Source of the DNA: Piromyces finnis finn
Taxonomy: Eukaryota; Fungi; Neocallimastigomycota
Assembly (NCBI GenBank): GCA_002104945.1
Contig: MCFH01000007.1
Span: forward strand, 620,001-684,000
Direction of reading: 5' to 3'
Length of the DNA stretch: 64,000 bases
The notes beneath the pieces are model-generated. The model was given only the letters and a program-made list of their open reading frames with translations, had not been told where the DNA came from and searched no databases. The position numbers were made by a program, and so were the translations under genes. Within the stretch, counting starts at the first letter, position 1, and each line of letters begins with the position of its first letter. Below, in pieces: positions 39,713 through 47,787 of this stretch.

Positions 39713-39726
39713 GATTAAGAGTCTCA
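39713..39726 (+). promoter_or_regulatory. Primer-binding site complementary to the anticodon arm of tRNA-Lys(CUU)
   Basis: GATTAAGAGTCTCA directly abuts the LTR. Its reverse complement TGAGACTCTTAATC equals nt 27-40 of canonical eukaryotic tRNA-Lys-CTT. Confidence 0.8.
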
Positions 39727-39759
39727 ATTGCTCTTATATTTAAGTAAGTTTTTTTTAAT

Positions 39760-42700
39760 ATGTCAAAAAGAAAATCTAACGGAGATACTGGATCAATTCC
39801 TATATTCGATCCTACCGTTATGCTAGGAAAGGTCACTTATGAATTGAACAATAAAAATTTCATAACGTGGCAAATGTTTATGAGGAATATTTTAAATTAT
39901 TATGGTCTTGAAGATTGGGTTGATGAAAACAAAACCCCAAAGATCAAAAGTGACGAAGGAATGGATATCGACGGAGAAGAATATCTAAAGGCACCTTTTG
40001 AAATCAATACCTACTATGATAAGAACGTAACCGAAGATGACTTAAAAACAGATAGGAATATCCAATTTTTAATTAGGTATACTTTAGGCCCAAACTGCCA
40101 ACAAGATATCCAAGATAGGTCTTTAACAAGCTACGAAATGTGGAAACTATTAGAAGACATTTATTTAGGGGATAAAATAGAAAGAAAGAATAGGCTTATT
40201 AAGGAAACAAACTCCTTAAAATACGACCCGAAAGAAAGTTTCTCAAGATTTGTAAATAAGTTAAATTCCAACTTTAATAAGTTAGAACAACTAAATGTGA
40301 AAATAGATGATGAAGAAAAAATTGGTTTACTGTATCAAGCCTTACCAGAAAAATATAGGAAAGTCACAGTCCTTAAGCATGAAGACTGGGAAGAATGCAA
40401 AAAGGACACAGCAAGAATGATAGATAAGATGAACAAATTTGATCCGAAAGAGAAATCTGAAACCTTCGGAATTAGACATATCTTTAGTGTTGAAGGTAGT
40501 TACAAAGGTGATAAAAGAAAGGAAAGTACTAAATACTACCGCAACAAACAAAGTAATAATCATAATAAAAATACAAATAAAGGAAAAGAAAAGTCCAATG
40601 AAGAAAGAAATTGGAATAACAAAAATAAACAAAACATTACATGTTATTTTTGTCATCAAAAAGGACATACTGTAAAACAATGTCGTATTCAAAAAGAACT
40701 TTCAGAAGAAGTTACAAGAAGGCTAAGAAAAGAGAAAAATAAAGGCAAGGAAGCATTTTTAGCAACAGGTGAAACAGTAAATAAACAAACCACTGAAGAC
40801 TTTGAACCAGAAGTTGGATATCAAGATTTGTTTACAGTTGATTACAATACATTATTTGACAATAACAATGATGAATGTAATAATAAATCATGCAATTACG
40901 TATCTTGTGAAAATGTACCTACAAGTTTTACTACATGGACTTTAGATTCTGGTGCTTCTAATCATATTACCAAAGATATAGGAATTCTCAAAAATGTTTT
41001 TGAACATGTAGAACCAATCAATTATGCAAATGGAGCGACTACAAAGTCAACACATATGGGTGAAGTAAATGGATCTATTAATGAAGAACCAATAAAATTA
41101 GAAGATGTAATGTACATCCCAGATGTAAAACGAAATTTAATTTCTGTTGCCAAGTTAGTTAAAAGTGGCTACCAAATAATCTTTGATGAGAAGAACAATA
41201 ATGTATTTGCATATATAAAAGATAAGAAAACAGATAATGTATACGAAGTTAAAGCAAATGAATATGATGTATTCAATTTGTACATCAAAGAAGGTAATGT
41301 AGTTAATAATTACTCAATGTGCGATAATGTACGAAACAATGGTGAATACTGGCATAGAAGAATAGGGCATCTGAATTTCAACAATAATGATGAAAAGAAC
41401 AATATTCACAATTGTACAATATGCATGAGAAGCAAAATGAAAGAAATCCCTCATAAAAGGTCAGATAGTAGAGCATCAAGTGTTTTGGAACTAGTACACA
41501 TCGATTTGGTAGGTCCAATCACACCATCAATTCATGACAACGTATACTTTTTAAGTATCTTAGATGATTACAGTCGATATGGATGGGTAATATTTGTCAA
41601 GAATAAAAGTGATGTTTTCAAAGAATTTGGAAATTGGCTGAATAAAACTACTAATGAATTATCATCCAAAGTAAAATATCTTAGAAGCGATAATGGAACT
41701 GAATTCACTTCTAATAACTTCAAGGAGTTATGTAACGAATATGGAATAACTCAACAATTCACCGTCCCTGGAAATCCGGAGCAGAATGGAAGAGCAGAAA
41801 GATTCAATGGAAAGTTAATAAAAACTGCTACTGCAATGTTAATGGACGCAAGGTTATGTCGTCGCTTTTGGGAAGATGCTGTGAAAACAGCGAACTATGT
41901 TCATAATCGAGTTCCGCACAGTGGAATTAATGGTGAAATACCATTTGAATTAATGTACAACAGAAAAGTTGATTATAAAAATTTAAGAGTATTTGGATGT
42001 AAAGTGTATTATTTAGATGACAGTAACATTCCAAAATTTCAAGACAAAACTAAGGAGGGAATCTTTATCGGATATGATGAATCTTCAGTAGGATACAGAA
42101 TATTCGACATAAAATCAAGGAAAATTAAAGTGAAAAGAGTCGTAGGTTTTTTAGAAGAAGAACCTGGTGACTACAATTATAATTTAGAAAAAGAAAATAA
42201 TAATGAAACATATAGTCAAGATACAGAAACTTTTCAAGTAAGGAACTTTAATTATATGTATGATAAAGAAAATGAAAACAATAACAATAAAGACAAAAAG
42301 GAAAAGGACATTTCAAATGAAAATGATAAATTAATGAATGAAAACCTAGAAACACTCAATGATAAAACTAGTAATAAAGAAGACTTAAAAGAAGTAAATT
42401 ATGAAGAAAAATTTAAAAATATAGAAGAAAAGCTGGATAAGCTCACATCACTATTAAATAAAGAAAAAAATAATAGTTCTGAAAGTTTTATGCAAGTCTG
42501 CGAGGACACTAATGATAGTAATATGAGTATAGAAGACTCAGAAGAAGAAGACTTAAATCTCTTAGACTATATTAAACTAAAAGAAAAGAAAAAAGAACGT
42601 TTGAACAAAAATAATTACCGGAAAATTGAAGAAATGGAAGAAAATAAAGAAATTAAAATAAGTACTTCAATGGAATCTGTAAGTGAAACCAATAAAGAAA

Positions 42701-45172
42701 AAGAAAACAATAATGACATTTCAGGAAGTAACGACGGCAATATAAATAACTTTACCTTGGAAGAAAATAATTTAAAATATAATAATTTAAAATATAATAG
42801 TGCTGACGAAACTGAAATTTGTGAAATTAAAGAAGTGAATATAAAGAGAAATGACGACAAGAAAAATAAAAATATAAACAGTAAAGACAATTCAAATATA
42901 TCAAAGGATAATAAAAGGAATAATAAATACCTGAATACAAAAGGAAATGTTTATTTTATAGAAGAAAATTCAGACATTGTAAATAAAAATGAATTAATTG
43001 AAGAAGTATTAAAAACACCATCAGAAATGGAGATAAATGATTTAACTGGAGAAATTGACAATAATGATTTTTTAAATATCCTGAGTCCTGACATTGATTT
43101 AGAAACAAGAAAGAAAATTGATTTTGAAAATATTGAGAGTGTCAAAAATAATATAAATAAAAATAATAGAAAAGAAATAGAAAATAATTATTCAAATGTA
43201 AAAGTAAATTATAAGAATGAAGAATATTATAAGAAAAATTACATACCTATTAATGAGAATGATATAAGAAGAAATTTGAATAAAGAAAATATCAATATTC
43301 CTGAAGAAAAGTCCAAATTTAAAAATATTTCTGATGAAAAAGAAAGTAATTTAAATAATCAAAATAAAAAGGAATATAATTTGAGAAATTTAAAAAATAA
43401 AAATGAAATTAAAGATCCAATCAATAAAGATAAATCTAAGAAAAAATTTTTTGATAAGAAAAAGTTATTATCAAAACAAAATTTTTTGAATAAGAGAAAT
43501 CTAAATAGAAAATTAAAATCCAATAAAAATTTTAAATTAAATGAAAATCATCCACCAAAGGAAGAAAAATTCCCAAGAAAGCGGAAACTTGTTCCAAGTG
43601 AAGATGTCATAGAAGAAAATTAAGGAAGTGGCGCTAACTATAGCACAAATCAAGGAGCCAAATTCCTATAATGATATATTTAAAAGAAAAGATAAGGATA
43701 AGTGGATAAAAGCAATAGAAGCCGAATTGCTAAATATGAAAGAAAGAAAAGTGTTCAAAAGAATAGATGAAGTTCCAGAAGACGCCAATATTATTGATTC
43801 AAGATGGGTATTTAAGATAAAAAGGAATAGCACTGGTGAGATAGAAAAATACAAAGCTAGACTTGTAGCCAGAGGTTTTACACAAGAATATGGAGAAAAC
43901 TACAATGAGACCTTTTCTCCTACTCTAAAACAAGACTCATTAAGAATCCTAATAGGAATAGCTGCAATTAATAACTATAAAATCCATCAATTAGATGTTA
44001 AGGCCGCATATTTGTATGCAGATTTAAAGGAAGATATATATATGAAAGCACCTGAAGGAGATAAAATGTATAAAAAAGGATTATGGAAATTAAATAAAGC
44101 ATTATATGGCTTAAAACAAGCAGCAAGAGAATGGAATAACAACATCAGCAATACTCTCATTGAACTAGGATTTCAGAAATTAGTTAGCGAACCATGCATA
44201 TTTATAAAGACCAAAAACAATAAATTAGTATGTTTAGTTGGAATATATGTTGATGACATCCTAATAACTGGTAAAAAGGAAGAAATAGATAAAACTATTA
44301 AATTAATTAAAGAGAAATATGTTATCACGGATGTTGGTGATGCAAATTTCATCATAGGAATCAAAGTAGAAACGTTAAAAGATGGGTATTTGTTACATCA
44401 AGAAAGGTATTTAAAGGATATATTACACAAATTTGGTTTAGAAAACTGCAGAGGATCAAAGACAACTACACCAATCAAGAATGATGAATAACTCAATCAG
44501 CCTTTTGACCCTACTACTTATAGAGCTGCAATAGGAAGTCTTTTATATTTAGCCATAGGTACTCGTCCAGATATCTTATTTTCAGTAACCAAAGCATCTA
44601 GGTTCTCACAAAATCCTACTATCCAAAATTGGAAGAATGTATTACAAATATTCAAATATCTGAAAGAAAATCCTCATTATGGAATCCGTTTTGAAAGAAA
44701 CTTAAATTTGAAGATTTTTGTAGATTCAGACTATGGGGGAGATGAAGAAACAAGAAAATCTACCACTGGATTTGTATTTTTATTGGGAAATGGACCAACA
44801 AGCTGGTACTCAAAACTGCAAAAATGTGTATCAACTTCAACCGCCGAAGCAGAATATTATGGACTTTGTGAATGCTCAAAGCAAGCTCTGTGGTATAGAA
44901 ATATTTTTAGTGAATTAAAAATAAAGGAAGAATGCTTAAAAATCAATATTGATAATCAAGCAACTATTTACAACGCAAATAATGAAACGATTAATCCAAA
45001 GTCAAAACATATTGATATTAAGTACCATAAAGTAAGAGAATTAATTAAAGAAAATAAAATCAGTCTAGAATATATAAAATCAGAAGAAAATTTAGCAGAT
45101 GGTTTTACTAAATACTTGAATAAAAATAAAATGAAAATATTTAGAGATAGTTTATTATATAAATACAAATAA
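39760..45172 (+). CDS. Copia gag-pol, disrupted by a +1 frameshift at about 43616-43623 and an in-frame TAA at 44489-44491
   Basis: Zinc knuckle CYFCHQKGHTVKQC, protease LDSGAS, pre-integrase WHRRIGH..CTIC, integrase HIDLVG/SDNGTEF/NGRAER, RT KARLVARGFTQ/LYGLKQ/YVDD, RNase H DSDY/EAEY/IDNQA/ADGFTK. Confidence 0.94.
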
Positions 45173-45429: not shown

Positions 45430-46321
45430 CCTTCCAAGGAAACATGTGTTTTATGATAGAATCAAAACATGTGATATATTTATGATGATATCCACATGAT
45501 CATTATCATAATAAAAGATGTTGGCTTTATTCCATTGGTACTCCCTTATTGAAGCTAAAAAATTAAAAATTTAAATAATAGCAATAGAAAGGAATTTATT
45601 TAAATAAATATGATACATTCATTTAATAAATTATATAAAAATAAATGAACTTTTAAATAAATTATTTTTTAAAAATTTAGTCATCCACTAAAAACAAGTA
45701 GTTGTTGGGTAAAAAAAAAGAAAACCAGCTAAGAAAATTTTCTTTTTCTTTTTAATTTATAAAATAATTCCTTTTTTTTTTTACTTTTTTTAAAAAAAAA
45801 AAAAAAAGAAAATTTATAAAAATAAATAATAAAAAAACCGAAAAAAAAAAAAAAAACACACTAAAAGAAGAATAAATTAAGAAAAGTAAATAAAAAAAAT
45901 AAATAAAAGTAAATATCGAAATTAAATATATTTCACTATTTATTGCTAGTTCTCCCTAAAACTTTATGGGAAAATTTGAGAAAAATTTAACCATTAATGA
46001 ATGAGGAAATAAAATTAAAAAGGAAATTTTTTTATACGATTATTGTATTTTTTGAGATATTACTTTATTTTTTTTTTTTTTTAAAAAAAAATAATATATA
46101 GATAGGTAGAAATACTATTAAATGGGTCATAACAAAATAATAAGTATAGAATAGGAAATATGTTGTATCATAGTTAAAAAATGAATAGTTTTATACAAGT
46201 AGAGTTAATAAATATTTTATTATTCATTGGAAATTGAAATCTACCAAAATTATTTCTTTTTTAATTTTAAAATGCATTTATTAAAATGAAAATAATTTAT
46301 ATTTTAATGTTTTTACATAGA

Positions 46322-47787
46322 ATGGCTAGAGGCGTTAGTAGAGCCCTTAAGAGTAAGGCTGAAAATAAAAAGGATAAAAAGGAAAAAAGAGATCAACTTA
46401 AAAAAGACAAGGAAGAAAACAGTGATAAGCCAAATGAAGTTCCAAAGTTTTTTAAATATGAAGATGGTAAACGTTCTCCTTTTGCCACATTCTGTATAAA
46501 GGCTGGTAGTATCTTTTTACTTTTATTTGTTTGGAGTAATTTATTTGTCCAAAAGGTAAAGAATAATAGGAATAGTAGTTGAAACGCTACAAATCATAAT
46601 AAAAATTTTTAAATTTTAAAAAGAAATCAATAATAGTAGTGTTTTTATTAACATTAAAAATACAATATACTCTTTCATTTTACTATTTATAATATTTATA
46701 TTGGTATTATATTTATCTATCAATTTTTTTTCTAAATGAATAGTATGTTCCATACAAACAACAAAATGAAGTTTTAACTAGAGTACTTCAAGATCCAGAA
46801 TTAATTAAGCATACTGTAAAAATTTCTCATGAATACCAAGAAATGTATAACAAATATATGGAAGAGAATGATAATGAAGCCAGAATTAAATTATTTGAAA
46901 AAATCACAGAATCTGATATTTTCAAAGGTAACAGTGAAGTTGAAAATATTGTTCCAGTTGATGATGAAGAAGTTCCAAACTCAGAAACTAAGAAGGAAAT
47001 TCCTCCAGAAGAAGAAGATGATGTTGATGTTATTGGTGATATGAGAGAAGAAATTATGGGTGGAGAAATTTACACTGTTGATGAAATATTCAAAAAGTTA
47101 GGTATTGAAAGAATTTCTGATTATGATATTGAAGGTGAATATGAAAGAAATCTTTTAAAAGAATTCCGTATGGATCGTGAAATGCCAGAAAACATTGCAA
47201 AGAAGGCTGATTTCTTCAAGCCAATTATTGAAAGAGGTTTAAAGGAAGATGAAAGATTCTTTGTCAAAAAAATTAATGATAAGAAGGGTTATGGTCTTTT
47301 TGCTAATGTTGACATTGTTCCAAATGAAGTTCTTGGTATCTACACTGGTGTTATTCGTGCCACCGATGCCGAAAAAGGAAAGAAATATGAATGGTACTAC
47401 TCTACCATTCCAGATTATAAATTAGAAAAGATGGTTGAATTAAGAGTTAATGGTAAGAGTAAAGGTTCTCATCTTCGTTTTGTTAATCACTCTCTTTACT
47501 ACAATGCTAGAATTGAATATGTTCCATACAATAACCAATGGGCTATTCTTTTCATTAGTAACCGTTATATTAACCGTGGTGAAGAAGTCACCGTTAACTA
47601 CAGAGAAAAGACCAAGCGTATGCCATCCAAGATTATTGATAAGTGGGATAAGGTTGAAGAAGAAGAAATGCAAAAATTGTATGATGAATACATGAAGCTT
47701 AAGGCTCAACAAGAAGCTGAACAACAACAAGTTAATTCTGAAGCTAATGCTGAAGAGAACAAGGCTCCAACCAAAGAAGAACTTTAA
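46322..47787 (+). CDS. SET-domain protein with an N-terminal transmembrane helix and C-terminal KEEL (~425 aa; exons 46322-46555, 46744-47787)
   Basis: SET motifs KGYGLFA, LGIYTGVI, RFVNHS, GEEVTVNY. TM segment FATFCIKAGSIFLLLFVWSNLFV. A phase-0 GT-AG intron joins the two ORFs. Biased codon usage typical of an expressed gene. Confidence 0.85.

What the first reader, a model, noticed from the sequence alone, without database searches (positions are those of the whole stretch)
46322..47787. SET-domain methyltransferase with type II membrane topology and an ER-retrieval signal (KEEL)
Seen: a basic N-terminal tail of ~53 aa, one hydrophobic helix, an acidic stalk, then a SET domain with intact GxG, RFxNHS and ExxxxY motifs. 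There are no post-SET cysteines (no Cys at all after the TM), and the protein ends KEEL-stop. Established: positive-inside rule for type II topology; KDEL-like C-termini (including KEEL) act only in the ER/Golgi lumen; characterised SET enzymes are nuclear, cytosolic or organellar. Inference: the catalytic domain faces the secretory lumen. That implies lumenal protein lysine methylation (or a repurposed SET fold) and a lumenal SAM supply, which I do not know to be described in fungi.
Basis: partly seen in the sequence, partly recalled or inferred. Interest (0 to 1): 0.72.

Follow-up and report, generated by a model that had tools for sequence, protein, structure and literature searches.

The report
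Membrane-anchored SET methyltransferase with ER-retrieval tail
An expressed gene of the gut fungus Piromyces finnis encodes a lysine-methyltransferase (SET) domain behind a membrane anchor and ending in a conserved ER-retrieval-type tail (KEEL), so an enzyme type otherwise known from the nucleus and cytosol probably works inside the secretory pathway; this topology is predicted, not shown.

Summary
The window is Piromyces finnis, and the gene is BCR36DRAFT_580900 (425 aa).

- **Gene model:** Transcript contigs from 4 runs in 3 studies splice the intron exactly as read. They also reveal an ATG-free 5'UTR exon, so the first ATG is 46322.
- **Protein layout:** a basic 53-aa tail, one hydrophobic helix, an acidic linker, a confidently folded SET domain with all catalytic motifs, no Cys after the helix, and a floppy tail ending in KEEL.
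- **KEEL is not chance:** 10 of 11 gut-fungus orthologues end in KEEL, and Anaeromyces robustus ends in AKEL. Pairwise identity is 95% in the last four columns, after a linker with 13%.
- **The anchor is old:** 21 named relatives come from zoosporic fungi. Every complete one checked has an N-terminal helix and none ends KDEL-like. A second gut-fungus paralogue has the anchor but no KEEL.
- **Topology:** the flank-charge rule favours N-in/C-out for the wider family (51 vs 14) and for the paralogue (9 of 10).

Best reading (about 0.6): a type II, ER-retrieved lumenal SET lysine methyltransferase. I found no paper describing one. Topology, enzyme activity and a lumenal SAM supply are all untested.

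The parts
45840..45908 (+). 5'UTR exon (5' end approximate; 69 nt recovered), no ATG
   Evidence: Loose ends of the transcript contigs before 46321 map uniquely to 45879-45908. Sequence read.
45909..46320 (+). 5'UTR intron (GT..AG)
   Evidence: Follows. GT lies at 45909-45910 and AG at 46319-46320.
46322..46480 (+). Start codon and basic N-terminal tail (aa 1-53; 18 K+R, net +8), predicted cytosolic
   Evidence: The MARG...LK start is conserved in all full-length orthologues.
46481..46549 (+). Hydrophobic signal-anchor helix (aa 54-76), holding the only Cys
   Evidence: Kyte-Doolittle mean 1.84. AF2 helix 53-94 with pLDDT 88-97. Conserved in the 9 N-terminally complete protein models.
46556..46743 (+). 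Intron, 188 nt, phase 0, directly after the anchor
   Evidence: Skipped in the contigs of 4 runs. Same position in Anaeromyces robustus.
46744..46866 (+). Juxtamembrane/stalk helices (aa 79-119), conserved in the clade (KYxPY...PEL..TVK)
46867..47034 (+). Acidic, variable, disordered linker (aa 120-175)
   Evidence: pLDDT below 50 at aa 141-163 and 167-175. Variable length in A1.
47062..47604 (+). N-flanking helices plus SET core (aa 185-365), pLDDT above 90
   Evidence: Pfam SET E = 8e-15. PDB profile hits EZH1/2 and MLL at E about 1e-8. Foldseek ATXR5 E = 2e-10 over about 205 columns.
47287..47295 (+). GYG (SAM-binding GxG motif, aa 260-262)
   Evidence: Invariant in A1. G260 and G262 are at least 90% conserved in the 117-sequence alignment A3.
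47476..47493 (+). RFVNHS (aa 323-328)
   Evidence: Invariant in A1. R323, F324 and N326 are at least 90% conserved in A3.
47599..47601 (+). Catalytic-type Tyr 364 of the EExTVNY motif
   Evidence: Invariant in A1 and A4, and at least 90% conserved in A3.
47626..47742 (+). Cys-free C-flank helix (aa 373-411) in place of a Zn-binding post-SET
   Evidence: AF2 helix 373-411. The DKWDK.E.EE..KLYDEYMKLK stretch is conserved. No Cys.
47773..47787 (+). KEEL plus stop codon, on a disordered tail
   Evidence: 10 of 11 orthologues end in KEEL. Last 4 columns 95% identical against 13% for the linker. Mean pLDDT of the 10-residue blocks from aa 411 is 57 and 49.

Best explanation
The gene encodes a single-pass type II membrane protein of the early secretory pathway.

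The basic 53-aa N-tail stays in the cytosol. The helix at aa 54-76 acts as an uncleaved signal anchor. The stalk, acidic linker, SET domain and C-flank helix lie in the ER lumen.

The free, disordered C-terminus ...KEEL would be read by the KDEL/HDEL receptor (Erd2) in the cis-Golgi, which returns escaped molecules to the ER.

The SET domain keeps every SAM-binding and catalytic motif. It most likely transfers methyl groups from SAM to lysines of lumenal or transiting secretory and membrane proteins, which requires SAM import into the lumen.

Shown: the gene structure, expression, fold, motifs, and conservation of the anchor and of KEEL. Inferred: membrane insertion, orientation, receptor use, catalysis and substrates.

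The anchor-plus-SET architecture is ancestral in zoosporic fungi. Its layout resembles that of Golgi type II enzymes. The KEEL tail was added on the very long stem of this Neocallimastigomycota paralogue.
For: 1. The model is transcribed and spliced as read, and 46322 is the first ATG.

2. SET identity and an intact active site: Pfam E = 8e-15. PDB profile hits to EZH/MLL/SETD2. AF2 core pLDDT above 90. Foldseek hits to ATXR5, SETD2, EZH2 and LegAS4. G260, G262, Y278, G280, R323, F324, N326 and Y364 are at least 90% conserved over 117 family members.

3. KEEL is conserved in 10 of 11 orthologues spanning Piromyces, Neocallimastix and rumen metatranscriptomes. It follows a linker of variable length and sequence (13% against 95% pairwise identity). 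Chance expectation is 3.8e-4. The tail is disordered and therefore accessible.

4. KEEL is an ER-localising end in human FOXRED2 (PMC2140024). KDEL-type signals also work on type II membrane proteins (PMC2120279 abstract).

5. The hydrophobic helix is conserved in the 9 N-terminally complete protein models, in every complete named zoosporic-fungal relative checked and in paralogue B.

6. By the charge-difference rule, the N flank is more positive in 51 and the C flank in 14 of 79 helix-bearing family members (p = 4.5e-6). In paralogue B it is 9 of 10. Several relatives have a helix at residues 5-25, like a signal peptide.

7. The whole N-tail is strongly basic (net +4 to +10 in the clade, +11 in Blastocladiella).

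8. There is no Cys in the putative lumenal part in 10 of 11 orthologues.
Against: - The 15-residue flanks of this clade's helix are neutral to slightly reversed (+1 N against +2 C in P. finnis), because of a conserved KKYxPYK after the helix.
- A K+R-only count over 25 residues shows no bias across the family (30 vs 33).
- A. robustus truly ends in AKEL.
- No dedicated topology or signal predictor was available.
- The C-termini of this lineage's own ER residents (BiP, PDI) could not be examined. The only hint is another scan note of a P. finnis protein ending in HDEL, which I did not check.
- No lumenal SAM transporter was looked for in this genome.
- There are no conserved N-glycosylation sequons apart from the NHS of the active site.
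Confidence: 0.6

Rival explanations
1. Opposite orientation (N-exo/C-cyt, type III anchor, or a hairpin). The SET domain sits on the cytosolic or nucleoplasmic face of the ER or nuclear envelope and methylates cytosolic or chromatin substrates. KEEL is conserved for another reason, such as a docking motif.
For: The local flank charges of this clade are slightly more positive on the C side. All characterised SET enzymes work in the nucleus, cytosol or organelles (general knowledge). The closest folds are histone methyltransferases. The N-tail resembles a bipartite NLS (my reading, not tested).
Against: This would require translocating a 53-aa tail with 18 K+R. Family-level charge difference and paralogue B point the other way. 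The end has K at -4 only, with E at -3, so it is not a KKxx-type cytosolic retrieval signal. The end fits the lumenal retrieval pattern and is the most conserved part of the tail.
Confidence: 0.2
2. The protein is lumenal and ER-retrieved but is not a lysine methyltransferase. The SET fold is repurposed as a binding module, or it acts on another acceptor (as SETD3 methylates histidine), perhaps because the lumen lacks SAM.
For: The clade sits on a very long stem (2.39 substitutions per site). It has replaced the family's SYGxxYWxxR C-flank with NYREKTKRMP..DKWDK. There is no evidence here for lumenal SAM.
Against: All SAM-binding and catalytic motifs are invariant in the clade and at least 90% conserved in the family. 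That degree of conservation is not expected of a pseudoenzyme. Lumenal SAM import has precedent in plant Golgi (GoSAMT; 10.1101/2021.07.06.451061).
Confidence: 0.12
3. The hydrophobic segment is not inserted in a membrane. The protein is soluble (for example nuclear, using the basic tail as an NLS) and the KEEL end is incidental.
For: The helix in P. finnis is only moderately hydrophobic (KD 1.84, with a Lys at position 60).
Against: Orthologues reach KD 2.2-2.5, paralogue B 2.5-2.9 and chytrid relatives 1.9-2.5. A helix at this position is the most constant feature of the family outside the SET domain. The conservation of KEEL would be left unexplained.
Confidence: 0.05

Closest known systems
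Canonical SET-domain lysine methyltransferases (ATXR5/6, SETD2, EZH1/2, MLL; PF00856)
   Same: Same fold and the same GxG, YxG, RFxNHS and ExxxxY motifs. The N-flanking helices align with the ATXR5 SET module over about 205 columns.
   Different: This protein has no Zn-binding pre-SET or post-SET cysteines and no chromatin-reader domains. It has an N-terminal membrane anchor and a KDEL-type end. Sequence similarity is only generic (E about 1e-8).
Type II ER membrane proteins with a C-terminal H/KDEL (yeast Sec20p, Sed4p)
   Same: Same targeting logic: N-terminus in the cytosol, one TM, and a lumenal C-terminus carrying the retrieval tetrapeptide. PMC2120279 states that KDEL-type signals serve type II membrane proteins. 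The Sec20p and Sed4p examples come from my own knowledge.
   Different: Unrelated proteins. Their functional domains are cytosolic, whereas here the whole catalytic domain would be lumenal.
Golgi-lumenal type II methyltransferases of plants (pectin and xylan methyltransferases) with GoSAMT SAM importers
   Same: Short cytosolic tail, signal anchor, stalk and lumenal SAM-dependent catalytic domain. They show that a secretory compartment can be supplied with SAM (10.1101/2021.07.06.451061).
   Different: They have a class I Rossmann fold, not SET (my own knowledge). Their substrates are polysaccharides. They occur in plants, not fungi.
Exported bacterial SET effectors (Legionella LegAS4/RomA, chlamydial NUE)
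   Same: SET domains that leave the producer's cytoplasm. LegAS4 is a detectable sequence and fold neighbour. Atlas neighbours include Chlamydiota SET clusters.
   Different: They are delivered by type III or IV secretion into a host cell and act on host chromatin. They have no signal anchor and no ER-retrieval signal.
Zoosporic-fungal anchor-plus-SET family, including Neocallimastigomycota paralogue B (e.g. P0178 of P. finnis); uncharacterised
   Same: Homologous N-flank and SET domains (E 1e-28 to 1e-10 with the clade profile). Same order of tail, TM, stalk and SET.
   Different: None has a KDEL-like end. They keep the SYGxxYWxxR C-flank that this clade has lost.

Membership tests
SET-domain methyltransferases (PF00856) | Significant match to the SET profile | tested here: met
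   55.5 bits against a cutoff of 22.4, E = 8e-15. PDB profile hits.
SET-domain methyltransferases (PF00856) | SET fold (beta core with pseudoknot region) | tested here: met
   AF2 pLDDT above 90 over aa 185-365. More than 360 PDB hits with E <= 1e-3; the 50 listed are all SET-domain methyltransferases.
SET-domain methyltransferases (PF00856) | Cofactor and catalytic motifs GxG, YxG, RFxNH, ExxxxY | tested here: met
   Invariant in 11-12 orthologues. At least 90% conserved in 117 family members.
SET-domain methyltransferases (PF00856) | SAM-dependent lysine methylation | not testable with these tools
   Needs an enzyme assay.
SUV39/SET2/EZH-type SET enzymes | Cys-rich Zn-binding pre-SET/AWS/CXC and post-SET modules | tested here: not met
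   No Cys after the anchor. No such Pfam domains.
KDEL-type ER-retrieval cargo (PROSITE PS00014 pattern [KRHQSA]-[DENQ]-E-L at the C-terminus) | Tetrapeptide at the extreme C-terminus | tested here: met
   K-E-E-L-stop at 47773-47787. 10 of 11 orthologues. A. robustus AKEL does not fit.
KDEL-type ER-retrieval cargo (PROSITE PS00014 pattern [KRHQSA]-[DENQ]-E-L at the C-terminus) | C-terminus located in the lumen | tested here: inconclusive
   Family-level charge rule and paralogue B favour it. The clade's own flanks are neutral to reversed.
KDEL-type ER-retrieval cargo (PROSITE PS00014 pattern [KRHQSA]-[DENQ]-E-L at the C-terminus) | Erd2-dependent retrieval and ER residence | not testable with these tools
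   Needs localisation with and without KEEL.
Type II (N-cyt/C-exo) signal-anchor proteins | One sufficiently hydrophobic helix, not at the extreme N-terminus | tested here: met
   KD 1.6-2.5 across orthologues. The next-best segment scores at most 1.25.
Type II (N-cyt/C-exo) signal-anchor proteins | More positive N-flank | tested here: inconclusive
   Whole tail net +8, but the 15-aa flanks are +1 against +2. The family as a whole splits 51 vs 14 in favour.

The most novel reading that the evidence does not exclude
Zoosporic fungi possess a previously undescribed family of secretory-pathway (lumenal or ecto-facing) SET-domain protein lysine methyltransferases. Anaerobic gut fungi have fixed one paralogue in the ER with a KEEL tail. 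Lysines of ER-resident or secreted proteins, for example the heavily secreted plant-cell-wall-degrading machinery, would then be methylated in the lumen. This would require a fungal ER or Golgi SAM importer.
Probability: 0.45. Interest if true: 0.85.

Novelty: new variant of a known kind. Interest (0 to 1): 0.72.

Why it matters
All characterised SET-domain lysine methylation takes place in the nucleus, the cytosol or organelles. A SET enzyme with its catalytic domain in the ER lumen would add a new post-translational modification to the fungal secretory pathway. It would also imply SAM import into that compartment.

Such an enzyme would give a concrete, testable handle: one small expressed gene, with a natural paralogue lacking KEEL as a control. 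Lysine methylation of secreted or ER proteins might, speculatively, affect their stability or protease resistance in the rumen.

The result also defines a conserved anchor-plus-SET family across Chytridiomycota, Blastocladiomycota, Hyaloraphidium (Monoblepharidomycetes, by my own knowledge of its placement) and Neocallimastigomycota. I found no paper describing this family.

Tried and rejected
- **Chance end:** rejected on expectation (3.8e-4; 1 of 150 ORF segments) and on conservation.
- **Wrong gene model or exon 1 skipped:** rejected. All four transcript contigs include exon 1, and the 5'UTR recovered has no ATG.
- **Positive-inside by K+R alone (25-aa flanks):** no signal (30 vs 33). Only the net-charge difference rule is significant.
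- **Recent horizontal transfer from bacteria:** not supported. The clade groups, weakly, with zoosporic-fungal sequences and paralogue B, apart from a set of unnamed signal-peptide-like sequences that may be bacterial. The backbone support is low and the stem is very long.
- **Dilysine (KKxx) cytosolic retrieval signal:** does not fit, because K is at -4 only.
- **NCBIfam scan:** gave only a generic SET-domain match to LegAS4.
- **Literature:** searches for a lumenal or membrane-anchored SET enzyme, and for ER-retention signals in anaerobic fungi, found nothing relevant.
- **The search of earlier findings by sequence:** blank.
- **Could not do:** I could not examine the C-termini of Neocallimastigomycota BiP, PDI or calreticulin, nor look for an MFSD5/GoSAMT-like transporter. 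I held no tool-given query sequence for them and did not type one from memory.
- **Joined spliced model:** I did not type or submit it. Exons were searched by reference. Full-length work used the database protein P0001, which equals the model.

Full report
**Where and what**

The window is AT-rich eukaryotic DNA. The exon-2 translation is 100% identical to Piromyces finnis hypothetical protein BCR36DRAFT_580900 (P0001, 425 aa). P. finnis is an anaerobic gut fungus of the Neocallimastigomycota.

The reading frame is:
- coding exon 1, 46322-46555 (78 aa);
- a 188-nt phase-0 intron, 46556-46743 (GTAAAG...AATAG);
- coding exon 2, 46744-47787 (347 aa plus stop).

I searched the exons separately by reference. 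For full-length work I used P0001, whose N-terminus reads the same as the exon-1 translation. I neither typed nor submitted a joined model.

**Expression and gene model**

Four runs from three studies each hold one contig matching the stretch with no differences. Each contig skips 46556-46743 with GT..AG ends.

The same contigs continue upstream of 46321 into sequence that maps uniquely to 45879-45908. This is therefore a 5'UTR exon ending at 45908, followed by a second intron, 45909-46320 (GT..AG). The 69 nt of UTR recovered contain no ATG, so 46322 (MARG...) is the first start codon. No contig lacks exon 1.

The runs are labelled as guessed RNA. The spliced form itself shows they are transcripts. 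Contigs cannot rank expression levels.

**Anatomy**

- **aa 1-53:** a basic tail with 18 K+R and net charge +8.
- **aa 54-76:** the only strongly hydrophobic segment. The 19-aa Kyte-Doolittle mean is 1.84 here and 1.6-2.5 in orthologues, and the next-best segment scores at most 1.25.
- **aa 79-119:** conserved helices.
- **aa ~120-175:** an acidic linker of variable length, predicted disordered.
- **aa 185-365:** N-flanking helices plus the SET core, modelled at pLDDT above 90.
- **aa 373-411:** a long conserved helix.
- **aa ~412-425:** a low-confidence tail ending in KEEL (AF2 model mc5715f5c3492, mean pLDDT 81.7).

Pfam SET matches at E = 8e-15. A profile of the conserved part hits the SET domains of EZH1/2, MLL1-4 and SETD2 in the PDB at about 1e-8. 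Foldseek's best match for the model is the ATXR5 SET module (E = 2e-10, about 205 columns), followed by SETD2, EZH2, DIM-5 and LegAS4.

The motifs GYG, YTG, RFVNHS and EEVTVNY (Tyr 364) are invariant among orthologues. They are at least 90% conserved in a 117-sequence family alignment. The domain therefore looks catalytically competent. The only Cys in the protein is C58, inside the helix. There is no Zn-binding pre-SET or post-SET module.

**Is KEEL more than chance?**

From the window's own composition, a [KRHQSA][DENQ]EL end is expected at 3.8e-4 of C-termini. This gene is the only one of 150 ORF segments of at least 60 aa that has such an end.

Eleven orthologues were found: Piromyces sp. 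E2, Anaeromyces robustus, Neocallimastix californiae and rumen metagenome or metatranscriptome proteins. Together with P0001, eleven of the twelve family proteins reach the C-terminus, and ten of those end in KEEL.

Mean pairwise identity is:
- 79% over the end of the SET domain and the C-flank helix;
- 13% over the following linker, which varies in length;
- 74% over the last 11 columns;
- 95% over the last four columns.

That pattern is the signature of a constrained terminal motif.

The exception is real. The A. robustus genome and two independent transcript contigs end ...AKEL-stop. The intron sits at the same place in that species.

KEEL is an ER-localising end in human FOXRED2 (PMC2140024). 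KDEL-type signals also act on type II membrane proteins (PMC2120279 abstract).

**The wider family**

A profile of the conserved part, searched against 1.84 billion representative proteins, found only the gut-fungus cluster above E = 1e-30. A second tier followed at E 1e-28 to 1e-10, made of small (200-450 aa) SET proteins.

About half of the best 149 have a hydrophobic helix upstream of the SET match (70).

All 21 of these relatives that carry an organism name come from zoosporic fungi:
- Chytridium, Zopfochytrium, Phlyctochytrium, Cladochytrium, Nowakowskiella, Dinochytrium, Gorgonomyces and Boothiomyces;
- Blastocladiella (two species), Sorochytrium and Paraphysoderma;
- Hyaloraphidium.

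Every complete one that I checked has a tail-plus-helix or a signal-peptide-like start. None ends KDEL-like; the nearest is ...GSEL in one Zopfochytrium protein. Their N-flank region aligns with that of the gut-fungus proteins.

A lead from another scan note (s1-173760) and the tree led me to a second Neocallimastigomycota paralogue, B (P0016; P. finnis P0178, 354 aa). It has the same order of tail, helix, stalk and SET, with a different conserved C-terminal extension and no KEEL.

In a quick maximum-likelihood tree, the KEEL clade sits on a very long stem (2.39 substitutions per site). It groups, weakly, next to paralogue B inside the fungal group. It lies apart from a set of unnamed signal-peptide-like sequences that may be bacterial. 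Backbone support is low.

The anchor is therefore old, and KEEL is a derived feature of one gut-fungus paralogue. This clade also replaced the family's SYGxxYWxxR C-flank.

**Topology**

The 15 residues on each side of the P. finnis helix carry net +1 (N side) and +2 (C side). The orthologues are similar, because of a conserved KKYxPYK after the helix. The local charge-difference rule is therefore neutral to slightly reversed for this clade.

Several other lines favour N-in/C-out:
- The whole tail is strongly basic (net +4 to +10 in the clade, +11 in Blastocladiella britannica). A tail like that is unlikely to be translocated.
- Across 79 helix-bearing family members, the N flank is more positive in 51 and the C flank in 14 (sign test p = 4.5e-6).
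- In paralogue B the N flank is more positive in 9 of 10 sequences, with one tie.
- Several chytrid members carry the helix at residues 5-25, like a signal peptide or a short type II anchor.
- The lumenal-type retrieval motif sits at the other end of the protein.

A count of K+R alone over 25 residues shows no bias (30 vs 33). No dedicated predictor was available. I rate the lumenal orientation as likely, not shown.

**Mechanism proposed**

1. An uncleaved signal anchor inserts the protein with the tail in the cytosol.
2. The stalk, acidic linker and SET domain are lumenal.
3. The exposed KEEL tail is bound by the KDEL/HDEL receptor in the cis-Golgi, and the protein cycles back to the ER.
4. 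The SET domain methylates lysines of lumenal or transiting proteins, using imported SAM.

The layout resembles that of Golgi type II enzymes, including the plant lumenal methyltransferases that depend on GoSAMT SAM importers (10.1101/2021.07.06.451061). Relatives without KEEL would be expected to travel further, to the Golgi or the cell surface. Substrates are unknown. Protection of secreted proteins from proteases is speculation.

**Rival readings**

- **Cytosolic or nucleoplasmic SET on an N-exo anchor (about 0.2).** This rests on the local flank charges and on the precedent of all known SET enzymes.
- **Lumenal but not a lysine methyltransferase (about 0.12).** This rests on the long stem and the replaced C-flank, but is opposed by the invariant catalytic motifs.
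- **Soluble protein with an incidental KEEL (about 0.05).**

**Novelty**

Three full-text searches for a lumenal, secretory or membrane-anchored SET enzyme found no such paper. A fourth, for ER-retention signals in anaerobic fungi, found nothing relevant. The library covers open-access papers only, so this is not proof of absence.

The protein is a clear member of the SET superfamily, and the KDEL system is well known. The new element is the combination, together with the conserved zoosporic-fungal anchor-plus-SET family behind it. I therefore class it as a new variant of a known kind.

**Limits**

- There is no direct evidence for membrane insertion, orientation, retrieval, activity or SAM supply.
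- The lineage's own retrieval code was not established. The only hint is another scan note, which I did not check, of a P. finnis signal-peptide protein ending in HDEL (s1-182184).
- Taxon names exist for only a minority of the family hits.

Noticed in passing
window 45840-46320: The gene has a non-coding 5'UTR exon (ending at 45908) and a 412-nt 5'UTR intron (45909-46320, GT..AG).
   Followed up: yes
P0178 (P. finnis, another scaffold); alignment A5: A second anchor-plus-SET paralogue occurs in Neocallimastigomycota (about 354-370 aa). It has a highly conserved C-terminal extension (ESGPDDYMDTEWD...PNKYELEDQ...) of unknown function and no KDEL-like end. It is probably the gene of scan note s1-173760.
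   Followed up: partly
L001:1501-2997, L002:97-1389: The Anaeromyces robustus orthologue ends in AKEL instead of KEEL, in the genome and in two independent transcript contigs. It appears to lack one Glu, and gives a natural variant for testing the signal.
   Followed up: yes
P0026 and P0168 (Phlyctochytrium bullatum HDU96_000217 and HDU96_000218): Chytrids carry several paralogues of the family, including what look like tandem neighbours by locus tag. Zopfochytrium has at least five.
   Followed up: no
P0021, P0031, P0169, P0170, P0173 (chytrid relatives): The transmembrane helix itself is conserved in sequence among chytrid members (S-[TA]-F-[QH]-A-...-L-L-A-[IL]-...-G). This suggests it does more than anchor the protein.
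   Followed up: no
P0006 and P0187 (Piromyces sp. E2): The KEEL paralogue and paralogue B of Piromyces sp. E2 both list a longest contig of 156,707 bases, so they may be linked there. In P. finnis they are on different scaffolds.
   Followed up: no
P0105 (802 aa, metagenome): A distant, Cys-rich SET-family hit ends in ...YSDEL, another KDEL-like end. Its origin is unknown.
   Followed up: no
window 39760-44491 (+): Two long ORFs (1287 aa and 287 aa) lie upstream of the gene. Another scan note places a Copia element at 39713-39734, next to them. I did not examine this.
   Followed up: no
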